Shown here one piece after another: positions 11,753 to 63,589 of a stretch of 64,000 nucleotides of DNA (the first letter of the stretch is position 1; each line of letters opens with the position of its first letter). A model generated the notes under the pieces. The model was not told where the DNA came from. It did no database searches and saw nothing but the letters and a program-made list of their open reading frames with translations. A program made the translations under genes and the position numbers. The DNA is taken from the IMG/VR virus record IMGVR_UViG_3300046092_000062, positions 124,001 through 188,000 of that record, one strand, 5' to 3'.

Positions 11753-12650
11753 GGACAAGCTAAAAGAGTACGTAAACTCGTCGGGCCTAGTTAACATGAA
11801 AGAGTGTGGCCCAGACATTTATGTGCTCAAGTACAAGAAGAAAGTGTTCTACGACAACTTGTGGAACGAGTACATTGCTGAATGCCGTGGAAGCATTGTG
11901 GACCGGGACTTTAACTTAGTTACATATCCATTCACAAAGATCTACAACTATGGTATCGAAAAGGAAGCACCAGTGCTGTCTGGCGATACTAAAGTTACTG
12001 CATTCCGTAAGGTTAACGGCTTCATGGTTGCATGTACTTGGTACAATGGCGACGTGTTAGTGTCAACTACTGGTTCGACTGCCAACGACTATGTTGAGTA
12101 CGCTAAGGAAATGATGCAGAAGCACATGCCTTGGACAGACTGGCAAATGGCAATGGGCACCGCTGACTCACGTGGCATGACTTACATGTTCGAATGTGTG
12201 CATCCAAATGACCCACATATCATTCCTGAAAAGGCTGGTATGTACATTCTGGGTTACCGTGAGAACGAATGGGGTAGCCGTGTGGGACATGACCCAGCTA
12301 TGCTTAAAGAATTGGCAGAAATGTTCAAGTGCTATTGTCCAGAAAGTGTAACAACTAACATGGAACGCCTGGTGCAAATGTCAAAGGAATGTAAGCACGA
12401 AGGTTATGTGTTCTACACTGATGAAGGCATAAGTGCTAAAATCAAAAGCCCTTACTACTTGACTAGCAAGTGGGTTTCTCGGAATCCACGTACAGACAAG
12501 TTGGTTAACATGCAAGCTGATATTAAGAAGCAGTTAGACGAAGAGTACTACCCACTGGTAGACGCTATCCGTGCTAACATTGAAGCTTATACAGCAATGG
12601 ACGAGCAAGCTCGTTTAGCATGGGTACGCAACTATTTGGAGGTGGCCTAA
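11745..12650 (+). CDS. RNA ligase 1-like protein
   Basis: ECRG, PFTKIYN, KVNG (motif I), FE, EGYV, KIKS. Confidence 0.85.
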   Translation: MFKDKLKEYVNSSGLVNMKECGPDIYVLKYKKKVFYDNLWNEYIAECRGSIVDRDFNLVTYPFTKIYNYGIEKEAPVLSGDTKVTAFRKVNGFMVACTWYNGDVLVSTTGSTANDYVEYAKEMMQKHMPWTDWQMAMGTADSRGMTYMFECVHPNDPHIIPEKAGMYILGYRENEWGSRVGHDPAMLKELAEMFKCYCPESVTTNMERLVQMSKECKHEGYVFYTDEGISAKIKSPYYLTSKWVSRNPRTDKLVNMQADIKKQLDEEYYPLVDAIRANIEAYTAMDEQARLAWVRNYLEVA

Positions 12651-21858: not shown

Positions 21859-22235
21859 CAACTAACTTTATTACCCCGCCGGATTTTGTAGAAGATCCAA
21901 ATCATTCAGTATTGTTAATTGACGTTGATCCAGTTGACGTTGAAACATTGGCATTTTTATGTGCAGGGCATAACGAAGCATTTAACGTGTACCTTTACAG
22001 TGCAGAATTAGATGACGTTAATTGGCTTACTAAGGCAGCAGGGCAAGTAGATGCAATCGTAGTAAACACCGCAGCCACTGATCTAAGTCCAATCAAAGAC
22101 CTATTTGTTGGGTCAGAAAAAACATATCATTACGGGCCAAAGAACTTTATCAATAATGATCGTAAATACACTAACGTATTAGAATATTTTATCAAAAGAG
22201 CCCATGAGCGAAACCATTCAACCGATCCACTGTAA
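21855..22235 (+). CDS. hypothetical protein
   Basis: ATGA overlap; FITPPD. Confidence 0.65.
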   Translation: MTTNFITPPDFVEDPNHSVLLIDVDPVDVETLAFLCAGHNEAFNVYLYSAELDDVNWLTKAAGQVDAIVVNTAATDLSPIKDLFVGSEKTYHYGPKNFINNDRKYTNVLEYFIKRAHERNHSTDPL

Positions 22236-23406
22236 CTTCTGTGGTAAAAGCCGCAACGAAGTTGAAAAGTTAATTGTAGCCAATGACGCGGGCATTTGTA
22301 ATGAATGTATCACGCTTTGTAGCAACATCATTAACAAAGAAGCCAACGATCATATTCGCAAGGATAAGAAAATTGGCAAGGCACTTGATCCAATTAAAAT
22401 CAAACAGCACTTAGACGAATACATTATCGGCCAAGACGCTGCAAAGATTGCAATTAGTGTGGGAGTGGTTAATCACTACAAACGCATCTTCTTTGAAAGC
22501 TCAGTGGAACTAGAAAAGTCGAACATTCTAATTCACGGCCCAACCGGCTCAGGTAAAACACTGCTGGCCAAAACAATCGCACGTTATCTAAACGTGCCCT
22601 TTGTTGTAGCAGATGCCACTACACTAACCGAAGCAGGATACGTAGGGGATGATGTTGAAAGTATTATCTCAGGCTTGCTAGCAGCAGCAGAATACGATGT
22701 TGCTCGTTGTGAGCAAGGTATTATCTTCCTAGATGAAGTGGACAAGATTGCACGTAAAAGTGAATCAGCTAGTCTAACCCGCGACGTAAGCGGTGAAGGT
22801 GTACAGCAAGCTCTACTCAAGCTAGTAGAAGGTACCAAGTGCAAGGTCAGCGTAAATGGTGGTAAGAAGCATCCAGCAATGGATCAAGTGGAAATTGATA
22901 CTAGCAAGATCTTGTTTATTGCTGGAGGCGCATTTGCTGGACTACCTAAGATTGTTGACCGTAGACAGCGTGGAACCAGTATTGGATTCAACTCGGCTAA
23001 CGAAGATCAAATCGACGTTACAGAAGTGACCCCAGACGATTTCCAAAAGTTCGGAATGATCCCTGAGTTCACAGGACGTTTCCCAATCTCTGTACAAATT
23101 GACGAACTAAGCAAGGATGACTTTGTTAAGATTCTAACTGAACCCAAGAACAACTTGCTTGCACAGATGAAGTTTTACTTCTCCTCAGACGAAGTGGAAT
23201 TAATGTTTACACTGGAAGCCATTGAAGCAGTGGCTGACTTGGCAGTGCAGCAAAAGGTTGGAGCTCGTGGACTAAAGAGTATTTTAGAGCGTACTCTTAC
23301 ACCATATATGTACACCCTAACTGAAATTAAAAAGCAGGGTTTTAAAAAGATAGAGATTACTGACAAAGTGGTTAAATATAACGACCCACCTAATTTTATA
23401 GAATAG
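22204..23406 (+). CDS. clpX: ATP-dependent Clp protease ATPase ClpX
   Basis: C4 Zn finger, [12 protein letters not shown] pore loop, DEVDK, IGF loop, GARGL. Confidence 0.97.
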
Positions 23407-25748: not shown

Positions 25749-26639
25749 ATGAAATTAATTCTAGCCTCAATGGTGTTGTTTGCAAGTTCTGTGTTTGCAC
25801 AACCAGTTAAAATAGTCGTACAGTACCAAGCCGGTGGGGTCACTGACCGTGTGGCTAGAACTGTCCAAACAGCCTTAGAAGATAACGGCATCGCCACAGT
25901 TGTGGAATACAGGTTAGGTGGCGGTGGATTCATTGCCTATAACTATCTTGCAAAATATCAAGGCAACGAAACAGTTATTATGGCCGCAAGTAACGGGCTA
26001 ACAGATGGCATTGGTACTGCAACACAAATTGATTATGAGCTTAACGACTTTGTTGTAGTAAAGCATCTAGGTACTGTGCCTTCAATGTTGGTAGTTAATA
26101 CTTCGCACCCTGCTAAAACGTTTAAGCAACTGGTTGATATTGCGCAAACTCGACAGGTTACTTATGGTCATAGCGGAGTAGGGTCTGGCACCCACGTTGC
26201 AGGCGCTATTGTTGGTAATCGCCGGGGTAATTTTGTTGGAATTCCCTACAAGGGCCAATCCCAGGCAATTGTGGATGTGCTAGGTGGCCAAATTGATTAC
26301 ATCATGGAAGCCGACACTGTACTTGACCAGCACATTAAAGCAGGCAAAGTACGACCGCTTGTGGTTATGTCAGCCGAACGACTGCCTTCGTATCCTGATG
26401 TGCCAACACTTCGTGAATTGAGAGTTAGTGATCTTGGGTACACTCGATGGTCTATATTGGTTGCAAATAAAAACGCCAACCCAGAACTGTTGCAGAAGAT
26501 CAGAAAGATCATTGACCAACCAGAAACAATGGCCAAATTAGCAGAGCTAGGGCAACGGCCAGCAAAAACAGTACCGCACCAGTTAGAAGTTCTAGCAACT
26601 CAGTTCCAGAAAATTCGCCAACAAGTTAATCTCGATTGA
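25749..26639 (+). CDS. Bug/TctC tripartite tricarboxylate transporter substrate-binding protein
   Basis: Signal peptide, AGGVTD..AR, GSGTH, PYKG, DVLGGQID, PDVPTL.E. Confidence 0.9.
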   Translation: MKLILASMVLFASSVFAQPVKIVVQYQAGGVTDRVARTVQTALEDNGIATVVEYRLGGGGFIAYNYLAKYQGNETVIMAASNGLTDGIGTATQIDYELNDFVVVKHLGTVPSMLVVNTSHPAKTFKQLVDIAQTRQVTYGHSGVGSGTHVAGAIVGNRRGNFVGIPYKGQSQAIVDVLGGQIDYIMEADTVLDQHIKAGKVRPLVVMSAERLPSYPDVPTLRELRVSDLGYTRWSILVANKNANPELLQKIRKIIDQPETMAKLAELGQRPAKTVPHQLEVLATQFQKIRQQVNLD

Positions 26640-48796: not shown

Positions 48797-49420
48797 ATGC
48801 CTAACTTTGTACCTACCGTACTCGAAAAAACTGCCAACGGCGAACGTGCTTACGACATCTATAGTCGTTTGCTTAAAGATCGTATTGTCATGTTGGACAC
48901 GGATGTTAGCGAGCATTCCGCTAGTCTCGTTATTGCACAAATGCTCTTTTTAGAAAGTGAAGATCCCAATGCAGACATCCTCTTTTACATCAACTCACCC
49001 GGCGGTCTCGTCACTGCTGGCCTGGCAATCTATGATACTATGCAGTTCATTAAGCCTGATGTTTCTACCATTGTACTTGGCCAAGCCTGCTCTATGGGAA
49101 GTTTCCTTGCCAACGCAGGAGCCCCGGGCAAACGACTAGTATTGCCAGAATCACGTACAATGATTCACCGTGTTAGCTCGGGCACTCCTAGCACACGTGG
49201 TAGCGTACACGTTCAAGAACTGCAATTTGAAGATGCTAAACGCAGCTTTGAAGAAAGCCAACGCTTGAATCAACGCCTTACTGAGCTGTACATCCGTCAC
49301 AACACTGCGGGCAAAACATACGACGAAATGTTTGCTACTATGAAGTTTGACACATTCCTGTCTGCACAAGAAGCAGTGGAAATGGGTCTTGCTGATGAAG
49401 TGATCTCTAAACGTCCATAA
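48797..49420 (+). CDS. clpP: ATP-dependent Clp protease proteolytic subunit
   Basis: DIYSRLLKDRI, YINSPGG, GQACSMG, MIH, D.FLSA.EA...GL.D. Confidence 0.96.
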   Translation: MPNFVPTVLEKTANGERAYDIYSRLLKDRIVMLDTDVSEHSASLVIAQMLFLESEDPNADILFYINSPGGLVTAGLAIYDTMQFIKPDVSTIVLGQACSMGSFLANAGAPGKRLVLPESRTMIHRVSSGTPSTRGSVHVQELQFEDAKRSFEESQRLNQRLTELYIRHNTAGKTYDEMFATMKFDTFLSAQEAVEMGLADEVISKRP

Positions 49421-56489: not shown

Positions 56490-56876
56490 TTGATGATCAA
56501 GTACATTAAAGAAACCACCACGCCAGCGGATGTAATTAGACCTGTGTTCCGCCCAGAACTCAAGCATGTGTTTGATGCAAGGGATGCAATTATTACAAAA
56601 TATAATGTTGCAGGTACCGAAACAACCCACGAAAAAACAGATTTACCAGACGGGTCAAAAATCACTGTAATGGTCAAGTTCTTTGAGTCTGTAGAGAAGT
56701 TTGATCAATGCTTTGCAGAGTTGCGAGATGCAAATCAAACTATCACTGCAACAGTCAACAATGAAAATGTCACAGTTGACTCAATCAACCACAATTTTGG
56801 AATCACAATTCGATATCAATTGCGTGATGCAGAGACTGACGAAATTGTACGAGATTGGACAGTTGCAGGTCGTTAA
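56490..56876 (+). CDS. late hypothetical protein
   Basis: CTAAATA and AGGAG upstream. Confidence 0.65.
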   Translation: MMIKYIKETTTPADVIRPVFRPELKHVFDARDAIITKYNVAGTETTHEKTDLPDGSKITVMVKFFESVEKFDQCFAELRDANQTITATVNNENVTVDSINHNFGITIRYQLRDAETDEIVRDWTVAGR

Positions 56877-56902
56877 ATTATAGCCTTGTGCTATAATGTA
56901 AG

Positions 56903-57226
56903 TTATTGCTGTATGAAGCAAAGAGAAAAGTGTTCTGGACGCGGGTTCGACTCCCGCCAGGTCCACCATTAAGCATACTACCCGACTGTAAAATTCAGTA
57001 AGCATTTAGGGAAGATCCACAGTAGTATGTTTAATAATGGGCCTGCCATGGTTTCGACAGGGCAACAAGTAAACAAGTGGACAGCTCGGCAATGTGAAAG
57101 CCGTTAGGGTTGGGGATTCCCGGCCGTAGAAGCAAAAAACGTAAATGCAAACGACGAACAGTTTCTAATGGTAGCCTGATAAAGGCTTCCGGGGCAGCTA
57201 TGCCTTGCAACAGGAAATAGTAATAG
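56903..57226 (+). ncRNA. ssrA: circularly permuted (two-piece) tmRNA
   Basis: T-arm and 3' acceptor strand GCGGGTTCGACTCCCGC-CAGGTCC-A-CCA (ends 56968) precede the 5' end GGGCCTG..TTCGAC (57039); G3-U70 Ala pair; tag ORF 57147-57179 ANDEQFLMVA. Confidence 0.9.
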
Positions 57227-57246
57227 GGGCTTCGGCCCCTATTTTC
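57222..57246 (+). terminator. intrinsic terminator
   Basis: AATAGGGGC-TTCG-GCCCCTATTTT. Confidence 0.85.
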
Positions 57247-57265
57247 TAATTACATACTCTATTCA

Positions 57266-58234
57266 ATGAAAAAATTCTTTTGTCCTGCACCGTGGCGATC
57301 TTTGTTCTACCATGTTGATCAATCGGCTGTGTGCTGCATTAGTTCTAAGAAGTTTAGCATGAGTCCAATAGAGTTTAGAAATAGCGACTACCTTAAAGAT
57401 TTAAAAACTAAATTTTTAAATAACGAGTTCGACGAAACTTGCAGTGGATGCAAGTCTCTAGAAGACGCAGGGCTGCAAAGTATAAGACAGCACCTACTCG
57501 CACTATACAGTGAGACCACAGTTGACCAACTCGATTATATGGAGCTGCGAGCAAGCAATCTTTGTAATTTTCAGTGCAAGATGTGCAATAGTGAAAACAG
57601 CTCTCTTATCAGTGGCTCAGTTAATACCGTCTTAGATTCTGACTGGGACGAAATACTTACTATGTCAGAGAATCTAAAGTTCCTTACATTAACTGGCGGC
57701 GAGCCAATGATAATTAAGCACTACTACCAGTTACTGGATCACTTGATAGCTAAAGACAAAACAGACATTAACTTGCGAGTCTACACCAATGCAAGTGTGT
57801 ATAATCACATATTCGTTGAGAAGCTGCTGAAATTTAATACAACATTAAACCTCAGTGTTGACGGAGTAGGAAGAACAGCAGAACTACAACGCACAGGCAC
57901 AGTCTGGTCTACAGTACAAGATAACATTACCAAGTTTGTGGCTTTACCGATTCAGATAAAATTTCATACCACTCTCACAAACATCTCGATCGTTGACATA
58001 CACTCGTTGGCCAAGTACTTTGTCGAGATAGTTGAAAATAATCCCCACTGCACCTTTGTTGCACATACTGCCAACAGTCCCAAATACCTATCCATTTACA
58101 ATCTAGCGCCTGCATTGTTTAACACCGCATTACGTAGCATCGAATCTGCACTAGGCATTCTAGTGCATCCACAATTTGCACAACTCAGAGAGCAGTTGGT
58201 TGCACATCAATCACTAATCAAAAGCAAACAATAA
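57266..58234 (+). CDS. radical SAM protein with N-terminal Cys (twitch/SPASM-like) domain
   Basis: CNFQCKMC, GGEP, TNAS, SVDG; FCPAPW, CC, C..C. Confidence 0.88.
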   Translation: MKKFFCPAPWRSLFYHVDQSAVCCISSKKFSMSPIEFRNSDYLKDLKTKFLNNEFDETCSGCKSLEDAGLQSIRQHLLALYSETTVDQLDYMELRASNLCNFQCKMCNSENSSLISGSVNTVLDSDWDEILTMSENLKFLTLTGGEPMIIKHYYQLLDHLIAKDKTDINLRVYTNASVYNHIFVEKLLKFNTTLNLSVDGVGRTAELQRTGTVWSTVQDNITKFVALPIQIKFHTTLTNISIVDIHSLAKYFVEIVENNPHCTFVAHTANSPKYLSIYNLAPALFNTALRSIESALGILVHPQFAQLREQLVAHQSLIKSKQ

Positions 58235-58370: not shown

Positions 58371-58910
58371 ATGAAAACAATCGGTGATAAACTAACCCCA
58401 TTCGCAGTAACAGGTGTTAAGCCAGGGCAACCAGCTGACCCATACTTCACAATTACAGACCAAAGCTTCGAAGGCAAGTGGAAAGTAATCGTGTTCTATC
58501 CAAAAGACTTTACATTCGTATGTCCAACAGAAATCGTAGCATACGATAAGTTGACAGGTGACTTTGCTGACCGTGATGCAATCTTGCTAACAGGTTCGAC
58601 AGACAACGAGTTCTGTAAGACAGCATGGCAAATGGCACACGCTGACTTGAAGAAAATCACTCACACTCAGTTTGCTGATACACAACGTGGTGAGTTGAGC
58701 TTGGTTGAGCAGTTGGGTGTATTCTACGCTCCAGCAGGTGCTGCACTTCGTGCAACATTCATCGTTGACCCAGAAAACGTTATCCAACACGTTACCGTCA
58801 ACAACTTGGACGTGGGCCGTAGCCCAGAAGAAACCCTGCGTATTCTTGACGCATTGCAAACTGGCGAACTTTGCGCTTGCAACCGTACCATCGGTGGCGA
58901 AACACTTTAA
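58371..58910 (+). CDS. ahpC: peroxiredoxin AhpC
   Basis: FYPKDFTFVCPTE, RATFIVDP, GR..EE.LR. Confidence 0.95.
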   Translation: MKTIGDKLTPFAVTGVKPGQPADPYFTITDQSFEGKWKVIVFYPKDFTFVCPTEIVAYDKLTGDFADRDAILLTGSTDNEFCKTAWQMAHADLKKITHTQFADTQRGELSLVEQLGVFYAPAGAALRATFIVDPENVIQHVTVNNLDVGRSPEETLRILDALQTGELCACNRTIGGETL

Positions 58911-58924
58911 TTAAGGAGACTGGC

Positions 58925-59431
58925 ATGGCTTTTATCGATACAGTAAAAGGTGCGTTACCCGAGTACGCAAAAGACACCAAACTTAATTTGGAAGCAGTCC
59001 TTGTCCGTAGTACACTAGATGCTGATGTTGCAATGGGCTGTGCAGTAGCCGCACTTGCTGCAACTGGCAATGGTAAAGTACTGAGCATCTTGTTAGCAGA
59101 CAGTCCAGTACACGCAGAGTCAGCAATGACGGCTGCATCAATTATGGCACAAAACAACACGTGGTATCCATTTGTTGAAATGGCAGACGATCCTAATCTA
59201 AAGGGATTGCCAGCTCAGTTGCGTATGAACGCCATTGCAAGTCACGGTGGTACTACCAAAGCTAATTTTGAAGCGTTTAGTCTTGCAGCCAGCATTGTTG
59301 GTAAATGTCACTTCTGTGTTAAGGCGCATTACGAGACATTGAAGGCAGAAGGCTACACAGTAGAGAACTTACGAGACATTGGGCGTATTGCAAGTGTCAT
59401 GAATGCTGTAGCCAAAGTGCTAAACAGTTAA
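58925..59431 (+). CDS. ahpD: alkyl hydroperoxide reductase AhpD
   Basis: PEYAKD.KLN, MAQNN.WY, CHFCVKAH. Confidence 0.93.
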   Translation: MAFIDTVKGALPEYAKDTKLNLEAVLVRSTLDADVAMGCAVAALAATGNGKVLSILLADSPVHAESAMTAASIMAQNNTWYPFVEMADDPNLKGLPAQLRMNAIASHGGTTKANFEAFSLAASIVGKCHFCVKAHYETLKAEGYTVENLRDIGRIASVMNAVAKVLNS

Positions 59432-60483: not shown

Positions 60484-61500
60484 ATGAAAAAATACAATAC
60501 ACTGGTCTTGATTGGTCGCTTTCAACCCTTCCACAATGCTCACTTGGAAATTATCAAACGCAGCACTGCACTCTGCGACAAGCTGATTGTGATTACAGGT
60601 AGCGCAGCTCAACCCCGTACTTACAAGAACCCCTTCACTAGTGCCGAACGAGCACAAATGATTAAAGCCGCAACTGGCGGACTTGCATTGCAAATTGTCA
60701 TTGAAGAAAACATTGACACCATGTACAACGACCAAGCCTGGGCAGTTCGTGTTCAAGGTATTGTGCAACGCAATACAAAAGCTGGTGAGAAAATTGCTAT
60801 CATTGGACACAAGAAAGACGACAGCAGCTTTTATCTCGATATGTTCCCACAGTGGGGCTACGAGAACGTAGAAGAAATTGCACCACTCAGTGCAGTTAAC
60901 ATTCGCGATTTGTACTTCAAGCGTGATTGCAACATGGAATTCATCCGTGGTGTAGTGCCCCGTACTACTTTTGATTTCTTGACACAATTCAAAGAAACAC
61001 CAGAGTACGAACAAATCATTCGTGAACGTGAGTTCTTGATTGAACACGCCAAGCAATATGCTGGTCTCAAATATCCTCCAATCTTTAGCACAGCTGATGC
61101 CGCAGTGATTTGTTCGGGCCATGTGCTTATGATCAAACGCCGTGCTGAACCTGGACGTGGCTTGTGGGCACTGCCCGGCGGTTACGTTAACGCCAGCACT
61201 GACAAGACTGTACTGGATGCAGCTATTCGCGAACTCCGCGAAGAAACTGGTATCAAAGTACCCGAGCCAGTGTTGCGTGGCAGCATTACAGGCAACCGAG
61301 TGTTTGATGCAGTGGATCGCAGTCCACGTGGTCGTATCATCACCCACGCCTTTAAAATTGAATTGCCTGATGGTGCATTGCCTAAAGTAAAAGGCAGCGA
61401 CGATGCTGAAAAAGCACGTTGGGTTCCTATTGCAGAAGTGCGCAGCGATGAGTGTTTCGAAGATCACTACGATATGGTCCAGTGGGCTGTGGGTGTTTAA
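60484..61500 (+). CDS. nadM: bifunctional NMN adenylyltransferase / ADP-ribose pyrophosphatase (NadM-Nudix)
   Basis: GRFQPFHNAH, KNPF, SA..IR; Nudix box PGG...RELREETG, SDDA. Confidence 0.95.
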   Translation: MKKYNTLVLIGRFQPFHNAHLEIIKRSTALCDKLIVITGSAAQPRTYKNPFTSAERAQMIKAATGGLALQIVIEENIDTMYNDQAWAVRVQGIVQRNTKAGEKIAIIGHKKDDSSFYLDMFPQWGYENVEEIAPLSAVNIRDLYFKRDCNMEFIRGVVPRTTFDFLTQFKETPEYEQIIREREFLIEHAKQYAGLKYPPIFSTADAAVICSGHVLMIKRRAEPGRGLWALPGGYVNASTDKTVLDAAIRELREETGIKVPEPVLRGSITGNRVFDAVDRSPRGRIITHAFKIELPDGALPKVKGSDDAEKARWVPIAEVRSDECFEDHYDMVQWAVGV

Positions 61501-62058: not shown

Positions 62059-63462
62059 ATGAAACTCTCTAAAAACATCATTCTCAACACCGACAGCTAC
62101 AAAGTGTCAATGGGCCGCCAATACCCAGCTGGCACTACCAATGTATTCAGCTACATTGCAGCACGTGGTGGTAAATTCACATTCACGCAGTTTGTTGGAC
62201 TGCAAATGTTCATCAAGGAGTATTTGCTTGAACAAATCACCAAAGAAGACATCGACATTGCAGAAGAAATCCTCACAGCGCACGGCGAGCCATTTGACCG
62301 CAGCATGTGGGACTACATTGTCGAAGCACACAACGGCTACTTGCCAGTGGTCATTAAAGCCGTACCAGAAGGCACTGTTGTGCCAGTTGGCAACGCATTA
62401 GTCACAATCGAAAACACTGACCCCAAGTGCCACGGTTTAACTACTTGGTTGGAAACTCCATTGCTTCGCGCAGTGTGGTACCCAACTACAGTCTCAACAC
62501 AAAGCAAGTACATTAAAAACATCTTGCAAGAATACTTGGAGAAATCAGGTGATCCTGCTTCTATCGGTTTTAAACTGCACGATTTTGGTGCTCGTGGTGT
62601 ATCTTCAATGGAGAGTGCTGGTATTGGGGGTGCAGCCCACTTGGTCAACTTCATGGGCACGGACACTATTACTGGTGTTCTTTACGCTCGTGAATATTAC
62701 AATGCTGGTATTGCTGGATTTAGCATTCCTGCAGCCGAACACAGTACTATCACTAGTTGGGGTCGCGCAGGCGAACTGAACGCTTACAGCAACATGGTTA
62801 CACAGTTTGGCAAGCCAGGCGGCATTGTTGCAGTTGTGTCTGACAGCTATAACATCTACGAAGCATGTAAAATGTGGAGCACTGGTGCGCTGAAACAGCA
62901 AGTGATTGATTCAGGTGCCACAGTTGTTATCCGTCCTGACTCAGGTGATCCTGTTGACGTGATGCCAAAGATGATTGCAATTCTTGCAGAAGGTTTTGGT
63001 TACACTACAAACGACAAGGGCTACAAAGTTCTCAACAATGTGCGTATGATCTGGGGTGATGGTATTAACCCATTGTCAATCCAAAGCATCTTGCGCACAA
63101 TGGTTGACGTGGGTGGTTGGAGTGCAGACAACTTTGCGTTTGGTATGGGCGGTGCTTTGTTGCAAGCAATTGATCGTGATACACAAAAATGGGCTATGAA
63201 ATGCTCAAGTGCATGTATCGATGGTGAATGGGTTGATGTTTACAAAGACCCAATCACTGACAGCGGCAAAGCTTCACTCAAAGGTCGTGTCAAGTTGTGG
63301 ACCAACAGTGGTGGCGAGTTTGCGACAAGTGTGCAAGCCCCTACTGGTTGGAGCGACAAGGGCATCGGTGGTTGGGTTGATGCAATGAAAACTGTCTACA
63401 TGGATGGTGCATTGTTTAACGAAATCACCTTTGAAGAAGTTCGTGCTAACAGCATGAAATAA
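62059..63462 (+). CDS. nadV: nicotinamide phosphoribosyltransferase (NAMPT)
   Basis: TDSYK, LHDFGARG, PAAEHS, VSDSY, RPDSGDP, GDG, FGMGG.L. Confidence 0.96.
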   Translation: MKLSKNIILNTDSYKVSMGRQYPAGTTNVFSYIAARGGKFTFTQFVGLQMFIKEYLLEQITKEDIDIAEEILTAHGEPFDRSMWDYIVEAHNGYLPVVIKAVPEGTVVPVGNALVTIENTDPKCHGLTTWLETPLLRAVWYPTTVSTQSKYIKNILQEYLEKSGDPASIGFKLHDFGARGVSSMESAGIGGAAHLVNFMGTDTITGVLYAREYYNAGIAGFSIPAAEHSTITSWGRAGELNAYSNMVTQFGKPGGIVAVVSDSYNIYEACKMWSTGALKQQVIDSGATVVIRPDSGDPVDVMPKMIAILAEGFGYTTNDKGYKVLNNVRMIWGDGINPLSIQSILRTMVDVGGWSADNFAFGMGGALLQAIDRDTQKWAMKCSSACIDGEWVDVYKDPITDSGKASLKGRVKLWTNSGGEFATSVQAPTGWSDKGIGGWVDAMKTVYMDGALFNEITFEEVRANSMK

Positions 63463-63514: not shown

Positions 63515-63589
63515 GCGCTAGTAGCTAAATGGTATAGCAGGAGTTTCTAAACCTCTGAATCGCGGGTTCGATTCCCGCCTAGCGCACCA
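63515..63589 (+). tRNA. tRNA with CUA anticodon (amber suppressor)
   Basis: GCGCTAG/CTAGCGC acceptor, GCTA/TAGC D stem, GGAGT-TTCTAAA-CCTCT anticodon arm (CTA 63547-49), GCGGG-TTCGATT-CCCGC, encoded CCA; promoter 63478-63506. Confidence 0.8.

What the first reader, a model, noticed from the sequence alone, without database searches (positions are those of the whole stretch)
56889..57246. Phage-encoded circularly permuted two-piece tmRNA with a non-canonical tag
Seen in order: extended -10 promoter, the segment ending in the T-arm and CCA (56968), a 70-nt intervening segment closed by a 14-bp stem (56968-81/57022-35), the 5' end GGGCCTG (57039), tag (A)ANDEQFLMVA, and a terminator. The precursor ends pair (56903-12/57217-26). 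Known: permuted tmRNAs occur in Alphaproteobacteria, some cyanobacteria and a betaproteobacterial lineage, and ClpX reads a C-terminal Ala-Ala. Inference: the MVA ending may weaken host ClpXP recognition or suit the phage's own ClpXP, forming a private ribosome-rescue and degradation circuit that could also offset tRNA/mRNA-cleaving defences.
Basis: partly seen in the sequence, partly recalled or inferred. Interest (0 to 1): 0.85.

Follow-up and report, generated by a model that had tools for sequence, protein, structure and literature searches.

The report
Jumbo-phage two-piece tmRNA gene
A 320-kb freshwater phage carries a real, split ("circularly permuted") ribosome-rescue RNA gene whose degradation tag ends in Val-Ala instead of Ala-Ala, but such phage genes are already known and nothing shows that the odd ending creates a phage-private degradation circuit.

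Summary
Window 56889-57246 (+) is a circularly permuted tmRNA gene. ARAGORN calls tmRNA* with tag ANDEQFLMVA**. Rfam gives RF01850 116 bits (E 1e-34) and RF04321 112.6 bits. Only the "precursor ends pair" claim fails (no better than shuffled).

The window is part of a 320,767-bp IMG/VR jumbo-phage contig from freshwater. The gene belongs to a large phage-borne lineage: the same 37-nt acceptor segment occurs in 86 viral contigs. Cultured Stenotrophomonas and Xanthomonas phages carry related permuted tmRNAs. Most tags in the lineage end in LAA; LMVA is confined to five contigs of one small group.

Phage two-piece tmRNAs are already published (Buchholz 2022). So is a megaphage (phage G) with a -VA tag, ClpXP and a suppressor tRNA.

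The phage does encode ClpX and ClpP. Its ClpX keeps the ssrA-reading loops (one change, R228K). In E. coli an LVA tag is degraded almost as fast as LAA. The "private circuit" is therefore unsupported, though not excluded.

Verdict: a new member of a known kind, of modest interest.

The parts
56889..56897 (+). Extended -10 promoter element (TGC-TATAAT); the transcript probably starts about 56900-56905
   Evidence: Sequence. TATAAT is invariant in five relatives and aligns to the promoter part of RF01850. Relative L230 has a full TTGACA-17-TATAAT at the same place. No -35 in the window. Not shown experimentally.
56900..56968 (+). Acceptor piece: P2b 5' strand GCUGU 56908-12, P2a 5' strand UGUUCUG 56931-37, T-arm 56941-57, acceptor 3' strand CAGGUCC 56958-64, discriminator A 56965, encoded CCA 56966-68
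   Evidence: Rfam alignments. The 37-mer 56932-56968 is exact in 86 viral contigs. P2a and P2b covary; the acceptor stem is paired in 65/65 rows (64 unique sequences; L029, identical to the window, appears twice as the reference).
56969..57038 (+). Intervening segment (70 nt), removed on maturation. Closing stem 56968-81/57022-35, with a 3-nt spacer before G1
   Evidence: Sequence and MFE fold. In 79 family members the closing stem averages 11.8 consecutive pairs against 4.0 in shuffles, while sequences and lengths (54-273 nt) differ. Excision is inferred from the family, not shown for this phage.
57039..57246 (+). Coding piece: acceptor 5' strand GGGCCUG 57039-45 (G3:U70), P2a 3' strand 57058-64, P2b 3' strand 57081-85, hairpin/pseudoknot region 57086-57130, tag frame, 3' hairpins and terminator
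57147..57182 (+). Tag reading frame: GCA AAC GAC GAA CAG TTT CTA ATG GTA GCC TGA TAA = ANDEQFLMVA**
   Evidence: ARAGORN. The conserved resume context UAAAU-GCA is present. Relatives read ANDSQFLMVA with Val as GTT instead of GTA.
57222..57249 (+). Intrinsic terminator: 9-bp stem (5 G-C), UUCG loop, T run
   Evidence: The stem is changed compensatorily in L034 (GGGGC/GCCCC to CCCGC/GCGGG).
22204..23406 (+). Phage ClpX (context; possible reader of the tag). The gene ends in TAG
   Evidence: Pfam zf-C4_ClpX + AAA_2 + ClpB_D2-small. E 8e-119 to E. coli ClpX; GYVG, TRDV, KKH and IGF loops aligned. 100 % identical in the two syntenic relatives. A link to the tmRNA is not shown.
48797..49420 (+). 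Phage ClpP (context)
   Evidence: PF00574, 206.7 bits. Aligned to solved ClpP with the catalytic Ser, His and Asp conserved.
63515..63589 (+). Amber-suppressor tRNA, anticodon CTA (context). The tag frame avoids TAG and stops with TGA TAA
   Evidence: ARAGORN and Rfam. Stop-codon usage.

Best explanation
This is a functional, phage-encoded, circularly permuted tmRNA (ssrA) gene of the beta-type architecture, on a 320-kb freshwater jumbo phage.

Proposed mechanism:
- It is transcribed by host RNA polymerase from its own extended -10 promoter to its own terminator.
- The precursor folds so that the intervening segment forms a hairpin continuing the acceptor stem.
- tRNA-processing enzymes (RNase P at G57039; 3' trimming to the encoded CCA at 56968) release two RNAs, an acceptor piece of about 65 nt and a coding piece of about 200 nt. 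Helices P2a, P2b and the acceptor stem hold them together.
- Host AlaRS charges it through G3:U70.
- With SmpB (probably the host's), it enters ribosomes stalled on broken or non-stop mRNAs during infection. It frees them and adds (A)ANDEQFLMVA.
- That tag is a slightly weakened but still ordinary ClpXP-type degron, readable by host or phage ClpXP.

Shown: gene identity, architecture, conservation, covariation, and the presence of ClpX and ClpP. Inferred: transcription, processing, charging, the SmpB partner, and the fate of tagged proteins.
For: - ARAGORN and two Rfam models score far above threshold.
- G3:U70 is invariant across the 64 unique family sequences (65/65 alignment rows). There are compensatory changes in P2a (UA 56, GC 3, CG 2, AU 1) and P2b (CG 49 / UA 10; GC 55 / AU 3).
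- The closing stem of the intervening segment is conserved as structure, not as sequence.
- Terminator and TLD changes are compensatory in L034 and L230.
- The gene, its promoter -10 and its tag are kept in syntenic relatives of about 89 % identity on 240- and 354-kb contigs. The Val codon is changed synonymously, GTA to GTT.
- The locus is reproduced exactly in an independent DNA run.
- Related permuted tmRNAs of this family are abundant in freshwater metatranscriptomes, while the flanking genes are silent there.
- Cultured phages carry the same kind of gene.
- Published precedents exist (PMC9004378; PMC7162821; PMC12484599).
- LVA-ended tags are good in-vivo degrons.
- The phage ClpX keeps the ssrA-reading residues.
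Against: - No transcript, processed end or tagged protein was shown for this phage. RNA-run contigs that lie on the locus are 90-95 % alike and come from relatives.
- No SmpB was found in the window or in the 10-kb flanks of relatives. The other 257 kb of the contig could not be read.
- The host is unknown beyond a Pseudomonadota hint, so the phage tag cannot be compared with the host tag.
- The effect of Met-Val-Ala on any ClpX is untested.
Confidence: 0.8

Rival explanations
1. Private circuit. The Val-Ala ending escapes or weakens host ClpXP and is matched to the phage's own ClpXP. The phage would then control which rescued products are destroyed.
For: - The phage encodes both ClpX and ClpP.
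- The LMVA tag, ClpX and ClpP co-occur in at least three related contigs; ClpX is 100 % identical in the two relatives (ClpP was recovered in one of them).
- The window's ClpX clade alone has KKH instead of RKH at a known specificity residue: 15 of 85 viral ClpX scored.
- Penultimate-residue substitutions raise KM for E. coli ClpXP.
- Phage G also combines a -VA tag with its own ClpXP.
- Non-AA endings sit on 6 of 10 tmRNA contigs of 200 kb or more, against 4 of 66 smaller ones.
Against: - R228K is conservative, and the other five ssrA-contact residues are unchanged.
- Phage G's ClpX has a canonical RKH despite its -VA tag.
- An LVA tag is degraded nearly as fast as LAA in E. coli.
- ClpX occurs in more than 400 viral contigs and ClpP in more than 600, so they are common regardless of tmRNA.
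- The co-occurrence test across contigs was inconclusive because hit lists were truncated.
- The LMVA, AVLA and AAFA cases amount to only two or three independent events.
Confidence: 0.1
2. Host-takeover tool rather than rescue. The phage tmRNA competes with the host tmRNA for SmpB, or preferentially tags host proteins early in infection, so as to recycle amino acids or to blunt host responses.
For: - A sigma-70-type promoter implies host-polymerase (early) expression.
- This role was proposed for phage Melnitz (PMC9004378).
- A TLD-only phage tmRNA inhibits host tmRNA (PMC4131195).
- Cultured hosts of related phages (Stenotrophomonas, Xanthomonas) already have their own tmRNA of the standard form (my own knowledge of the standard form in Gammaproteobacteria).
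Against: The full tag frame, resume context and stops are conserved across the family, which a pure decoy would not need. No known mechanism would direct tmRNA to host messages rather than phage ones.
Confidence: 0.1
3. Inert passenger: a host ssrA fragment picked up by the phage, or a chimeric assembly.
For: Fragments of ssrA are common at prophage ends (PMC9004378).
Against: - The gene is complete, with its own promoter and terminator.
- It is flanked by phage genes on a 320-kb contig and is syntenic in relatives.
- It is reproduced in an independent run.
- Compensatory evolution is seen.
- No bacterial species representative holds a permuted tmRNA with this 32-nt segment. The 11 bacterial (MAG) contigs that matched were not permuted: ARAGORN called a standard one-piece tmRNA in 10 and nothing in one.
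Confidence: 0.02

Closest known systems
Betaproteobacterial-type two-piece tmRNA (Rfam RF01850; permuted form RF04321)
   Same: The gene order is the same: promoter, acceptor piece, CCA, intervening segment, coding piece, terminator. So are the P2 helices between the pieces, G3:U70, the UAAAU-GCA resume context and an ANDE.F... tag. Scores are 116 and 112.6 bits.
   Different: It is carried by a phage. The middle part of the long P2 helix of the model is not formed (pairs flagged). The tag ends LMVA, where the model consensus reads F-A-M-A-A. No bacterial species representative has a permuted tmRNA with this acceptor/T-arm 32-mer.
Two-piece tmRNAs of cultured and marine phages (Melnitz and pelagimyophages, PMC9004378; Stenotrophomonas phage Marzo, Xanthomonas phage BUDD, Stenotrophomonas phage QDWS359)
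   Same: These are phage-encoded permuted tmRNAs with complete tags. Marzo and its relatives share the acceptor-piece sequence at 80-85 %.
   Different: Melnitz's is reported as alpha-type and under a glutamine riboswitch. Marzo, BUDD and QDWS359 tags end RIAA, ARYA and AIAA. None is on a 320-kb genome with ClpXP.
Bacillus megaphage G translation/proteolysis suite
   Same: It is a jumbo phage with a tmRNA whose tag ends in Val-Ala (AKLNITNNELQVA), adjacent ClpP and ClpX genes, and a stop-codon suppressor tRNA.
   Different: Phage G's tmRNA is the standard one-piece form (RF00023). Its suppressor reads TAA rather than TAG. Its ClpX has RKH rather than KKH. Its host is Gram-positive.
Huge-phage tmRNA/SmpB sets (Al-Shayeb 2020, PMC7162821; Lak phages)
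   Same: These are large phages that supplement ribosome rescue.
   Different: They also encode SmpB. None was found in this window.

Membership tests
tmRNA (ssrA), permuted/two-piece form | tRNA-like domain: 7-bp acceptor stem, T-arm with a T-loop, 3' CCA | tested here: met
   GGGCCUG/CAGGUCC, GCGGG-UUCGACU-CCCGC, and ACCA ending at 56968. The acceptor stem is paired in 65/65 family alignment rows.
tmRNA (ssrA), permuted/two-piece form | G3:U70 alanine identity pair | tested here: met
   G57041 pairs with U56962. G-U is present in 65/65 family alignment rows.
tmRNA (ssrA), permuted/two-piece form | Short tag reading frame with an alanine resume codon, a stop, and a hydrophobic C-terminus ending in Ala | tested here: met
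   GCA at 57147, then ANDEQFLMVA and TGA TAA. The last residue is Ala; the penultimate is Val, not Ala.
tmRNA (ssrA), permuted/two-piece form | Circular permutation: the 3' tRNA half lies upstream of the 5' half, with a removable intervening segment | tested here: met
   CCA at 56968 lies upstream of G1 at 57039. ARAGORN calls tmRNA*. RF04321 and RF01850 match end to end. The stem of the intervening segment is conserved in the family.
tmRNA (ssrA), permuted/two-piece form | Inter-piece helices (P2) supported by covariation | tested here: met
   P2a 56931-37/57058-64 and P2b 56908-12/57081-85 show double changes. The coordinates printed in the labels for P2a are off by one to three bases; those given here were re-read.
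tmRNA (ssrA), permuted/two-piece form | Pseudoknots flanking the tag | tested here: inconclusive
   The hairpin CGGC/GCCG at 57087-90/57100-03 and the downstream hairpins are present and match RF01850. Pseudoknot pairings were not modelled.
tmRNA (ssrA), permuted/two-piece form | Processing into two RNAs, and aminoacylation | not testable with these tools
   Only Logan contigs of relatives lay on the locus. One relative's RNA contig runs into adapter at 56966, two bases short of the CCA end. That is weak and does not come from this phage.
tmRNA (ssrA), permuted/two-piece form | Dedicated partner SmpB available | tested here: inconclusive
   There is no SmpB-like frame in the window or in the viral loci. 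Host SmpB is presumed. The rest of the 320-kb contig was not readable.
ClpXP ssrA-type degron (C-motif 1, ...LAA-COOH) | C-terminal Ala-Ala-COOH | tested here: not met
   The tag ends Met-Val-Ala. The terminal Ala and carboxylate are kept, while the penultimate Ala is replaced by Val. An LVA variant still works as a degron in E. coli.
Bacterial-type ClpX able to read ssrA tags | Pore-1 Y153/V154, pore-2 T199/V202, RKH R228/H230, IGF loop, zinc-finger N-domain | tested here: met
   The alignment to E. coli ClpX (8e91) shows GYVG, L-T-R-D-V, K-K-H (R228K), IGF and four Cys. Residue roles are from PMC7652416.

The most novel reading that the evidence does not exclude
The non-Ala-Ala endings of jumbo-phage tmRNA tags (LMVA here; AVLA and AAFA in other large contigs; QVA in phage G) may be tuned to phage-encoded ClpXP, here a clade-specific KKH-loop ClpX. 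During infection the phage, not the host, would then decide the fate of rescued nascent chains. All of this would ride on a tmRNA lineage that circulates among phages and has no cellular counterpart with the same tRNA-like domain.
Probability: 0.1. Interest if true: 0.65.

Novelty: new member of a known kind. Interest (0 to 1): 0.33.

Why it matters
The locus adds a well-anatomised example to the growing list of large phages that carry ribosome-rescue and proteolysis genes. It also shows that one permuted tmRNA lineage is very widespread in freshwater phages, with the same 37-nt tRNA-like segment in 86 IMG/VR contigs of 4 to 355 kb. It gives a concrete, cheap test: degradation of ANDEQFLMVA-tagged versus LAA-tagged reporters by host and phage ClpXP. 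That test addresses whether phages retune the degradation signal. In itself it changes no concept, because phage two-piece tmRNAs, phage ClpXP and even a -VA phage tag are already on record.

Tried and rejected
- **Genome-wide TAG recoding**, suggested by the CTA tRNA. Rejected: the standard code gives 83-89 % coding, TAG is merely the rarest stop (8 of 92), and reading TAG as sense gains no more than reading TGA or TAA as sense.
- **'Precursor ends pair'.** Rejected as chance.
- **A close cultured relative of the phage.** None was found by megablast of 24 kb.
- **Bacterial source of the tmRNA.** The scan of 185,579 species with the 32-mer returned 11 MAG contigs, none with a permuted tmRNA (10 standard one-piece calls, one with no call), mostly Saprospiraceae MAGs. 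No donor was identified. The exact-match design cannot see diverged beta-type tmRNAs.
- **Host identification** through the TctC/Bug-family gene. This reached only 'Pseudomonadota'.
- **SmpB.** It is absent from the window and loci.
- **Co-occurrence of ClpX/ClpP with tag type across contigs.** Inconclusive: hit lists were truncated at 80 of more than 416 (ClpX) and more than 600 (ClpP), and most contigs are fragments.
- **Expression and processing from public RNA runs.** Only relatives' conserved parts were recovered, as assembled contigs.
- **Papers not held.** Andersen 1998 and Sharkady and Williams 2004 could not be read. The LVA statement therefore rests on PMC3511798.

Full report
**1. 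Is it there?**

Yes. ARAGORN reports a permuted tmRNA (tmRNA*) at 56876-57270 on the + strand, with tag ANDEQFLMVA**. Rfam reports beta_tmRNA RF01850 at 116 bits (gathering 84, E 1.3e-34) over 56859-57245. It also reports tmRNA_permuted RF04321 at 112.6 bits (gathering 47) over 56907-57179.

- TGC-TATAAT at 56889-97.
- T-arm GCGGG-TTCGACT-CCCGC at 56941-57.
- CAGGTCC-A-CCA ending at 56968.
- A 70-nt intervening segment whose ends form a 14-bp stem, 56968-81/57022-35, with one G-U.
- GGGCCTG at 57039-45, which pairs with CAGGTCC and gives G3:U70.
- The frame GCA AAC GAC GAA CAG TTT CTA ATG GTA GCC TGA TAA at 57147-82.
- A 9-bp GC-rich hairpin with a T run at 57222-49.

The MFE fold of 56903-57246 shows the T-arm, acceptor stem, intervening-segment stem and terminator (-118.6 kcal/mol, z = -4.6).

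One claim fails. The pairing of 56903-12 with 57217-26 is no better than shuffled sequence (z = -0.62; family median 0.1). It also competes with helix P2b and with the terminator.

**2. Where is it?**

The window is 100 % identical to a stored piece of IMGVR_UViG_3300046092_000062, a 320,767-bp viral contig. Window base 1 corresponds to about contig base 124,001. G+C is 43.7 %.

The genes are phage-like and typical of a jumbo phage:
- tail-spike-like protein, class Ia RNR subunits, cell-wall hydrolase;
- ClpX (22204-23406), Hsp20, ClpP (48797-49420), UvdE, an amidoligase;
- radical SAM, AhpC and AhpD-like proteins, NMNAT-Nudix and NAMPT.

Many ORFs have no family. Megablast finds no close cultured relative. 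Public runs that hold the locus are freshwater metagenomes. One independent DNA run reproduces 56759-57682 without a single difference.

**3. The family it belongs to**

The 37-nt acceptor segment 56932-56968 occurs exactly in 86 IMG/VR contigs of 4 to 355 kb. ARAGORN finds permuted tmRNAs in 76 of the 86.

Cultured phages carry related permuted genes, partly unannotated or overlapped by protein calls: Stenotrophomonas phage Marzo and other Menderavirus phages, Xanthomonas phage BUDD, and Stenotrophomonas phage QDWS359.

The 64 unique family sequences (65 alignment rows, since L029, which is identical to the window, appears twice as the reference) show the following:
- G3:U70 is invariant.
- P2a has compensatory changes (UA 56, GC 3, CG 2, AU 1 at its outer pair).
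- P2b has compensatory changes (CG 49 / UA 10; GC 55 / AU 3).

The intervening segment varies from 54 to 273 nt and in sequence. It nevertheless nearly always closes with a stem that starts at the last A of CCA and ends 3 nt before G1. The mean is 11.8 consecutive pairs against 4.0 in shuffles. This is what a segment that must be presented to processing enzymes and then discarded would look like.

A scan of one genome per bacterial and archaeal species with a 32-nt core of this segment gave 11 MAG contigs. None holds a permuted tmRNA: ARAGORN called a standard one-piece tmRNA in 10 and nothing in one. So no cellular permuted tmRNA with this tRNA-like domain was seen. Diverged beta-type genes would have been missed by the exact-match design.

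**4. The tag**

The 80 permuted tmRNAs compared are 76 from IMG/VR contigs, three from cultured phages, and the window. The window duplicates L029.
- 68 end in Ala-Ala (60 of them LAA; the commonest tag is ANDEQFALAA).
- 7 end in VA, 2 in FA, 2 in LA and 1 in YA.

LMVA is coded in only five IMG/VR contigs:
- the window's own contig;
- two syntenic relatives of about 89 % identity (354 and 240 kb; tag ANDSQFLMVA);
- a 354-kb contig with other flanks (same tag, once ARAGORN's over-long call is corrected);
- a 30-kb fragment, L230.

Val is GTA in the window and GTT in the relatives, so the residue is kept across a synonymous change. FLMAA tags exist in other members, so LMVA is one A-to-V step away.

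L230 has the same coding piece but a different tRNA-like domain, with compensatory changes. It still scores 89.6 bits, and it has a perfect TTGACA-17-TATAAT promoter.

**5. The 'private circuit'**

The premise is true. The phage has a ClpX with zinc finger, AAA+ module and IGF loop. It also has a ClpP with the catalytic triad aligned.

But the ClpX residues that contact the ssrA tag in E. coli (Y153, V154, T199, V202, R228, H230; PMC7652416) are all kept except R228, which is Lys. This KKH loop is peculiar to the window's ClpX clade: 15 of 85 viral ClpX scored have it, and the others have RKH or RKN. That is a lead, not evidence.

Phage G combines a -VA tag with a canonical RKH ClpX.

Experimentally, penultimate substitutions raise KM in vitro. 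In vivo, however, an LVA tag gives LacI a half-life of about 13 min against about 8 min for LAA at 37 C (PMC3511798). The expected effect is a modest weakening, not escape.

ClpX occurs in more than 400 IMG/VR contigs and ClpP in more than 600. My attempt to intersect them with tmRNA contigs was defeated by truncated lists and fragmentary contigs.

No SmpB is encoded in the window. Among deposited phages, SmpB is essentially limited to Lak-type megaphages and prophage ends.

**6. Expression**

Three freshwater metatranscriptome runs give high depth only over 56912-56968 and 57037-57166, at 90-95 % likeness, and none over the flanking genes. This shows that relatives of this tmRNA are abundant RNAs in such waters. 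It does not show that this phage's copy is transcribed.

Joints that 'skip' 56969-57036 carry other letters in between, so they are relatives with different intervening segments, not spliced forms. One relative's contig runs into adapter sequence at 56966, close to the expected 3' end. That is weak evidence.

**7. What is known**

- Permuted tmRNAs in phages were surveyed by Buchholz et al. 2022: 402 phage genomes with tmRNA, 133 unique, of which 53 are two-piece and 50 of those aquatic.
- The 2025 tmRNA database lists 79 phage sequences and is the source of RF04321.
- Huge phages with tmRNA and SmpB are reported. Jumbo phages with ClpP and ClpX are reported.
- Phage G has a tmRNA (tag ...LQVA), ClpP, ClpX and a suppressor tRNA together. 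[quoted passage not shown]

The present locus is therefore a new member of a known kind. Its distinguishing points are the beta-type two-piece form on a 320-kb genome, the LMVA ending, and the KKH ClpX.

**8. Verdict**

The best explanation is a functional phage tmRNA that supplements ribosome rescue during infection, with an ordinary, perhaps slightly attenuated, ClpXP-type tag (confidence 0.8). The private circuit is kept as the most novel reading, at about 0.1.

Noticed in passing
window 63515-63589 (+); also L230 3614-3687 (-), L013 about 12209-12303: An amber-suppressor tRNA (anticodon CTA) is conserved in relatives. There is no genome-wide TAG recoding (TAA 60, TGA 24, TAG 8 of 92 genes). 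However, clpX itself ends in TAG, and read-through would add 21 codons. The tmRNA tag stops with TGA TAA. Double stops recur in the tmRNAs of the large contigs.
   Followed up: partly
window 60484-61500 and 62059-63462 (+): An NMN adenylyltransferase-Nudix fusion and a nicotinamide phosphoribosyltransferase lie side by side. This is a phage NAD+ salvage/reconstitution pair of the kind linked to countering NAD-depleting defences. AhpC (58371-58910) and an AhpD-like CMD protein (58871-59431) lie just downstream of the tmRNA.
   Followed up: no
L009 6019-6505, L082 5078-5564, L028 4472-4993, L030 12718-13305, L020 1383-2017, L084 2172-2617: Some phage permuted tmRNAs of this lineage encode very long tags (26-33 aa). 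They start at the conserved UAAAU-GCA resume site and share a basic module (..GTVKVT.GK.FRFG..). Several end in AFA or VLA instead of LAA. No explanation.
   Followed up: no
IMG/VR loci L005-L090: Non-Ala-Ala tag endings sit on 6 of 10 tmRNA-bearing contigs of 200 kb or more, against 4 of 66 smaller ones. These are probably only two or three independent events, and many small contigs are fragments.
   Followed up: partly
L230 4891-5298 (-): A close relative has the same coding piece and tag but a different tRNA-like domain: T stem GAGGC/GCCUC, a 6-nt T-loop, and P2a changed compensatorily. It also has a perfect TTGACA-17-TATAAT promoter. ARAGORN misses it, while Rfam still scores 89.6 bits. 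This may be a recombinant or a fast-evolving TLD.
   Followed up: partly
window 22204-23406 (ClpX residues 219-221 of 400): The RKH specificity loop reads KKH only in the ClpX clade nearest the window: 15 of 85 viral ClpX scored. 60 have RKH and 10 have RKN.
   Followed up: partly
L001 (Marzo), L002 (BUDD), L003 (QDWS359): In GenBank records of cultured phages, the permuted tmRNA is either unannotated or covered by 'hypothetical protein' CDS calls (BUDD, QDWS359). ARAGORN also emits a spurious one-piece tmRNA call that overlaps tRNA genes in Marzo.
   Followed up: no
window 25749-26639 (+): A TctC/Bug-family periplasmic solute-binding protein is encoded by the phage. This family is typical of Pseudomonadota, which gives a possible hint to the host.
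   Followed up: partly
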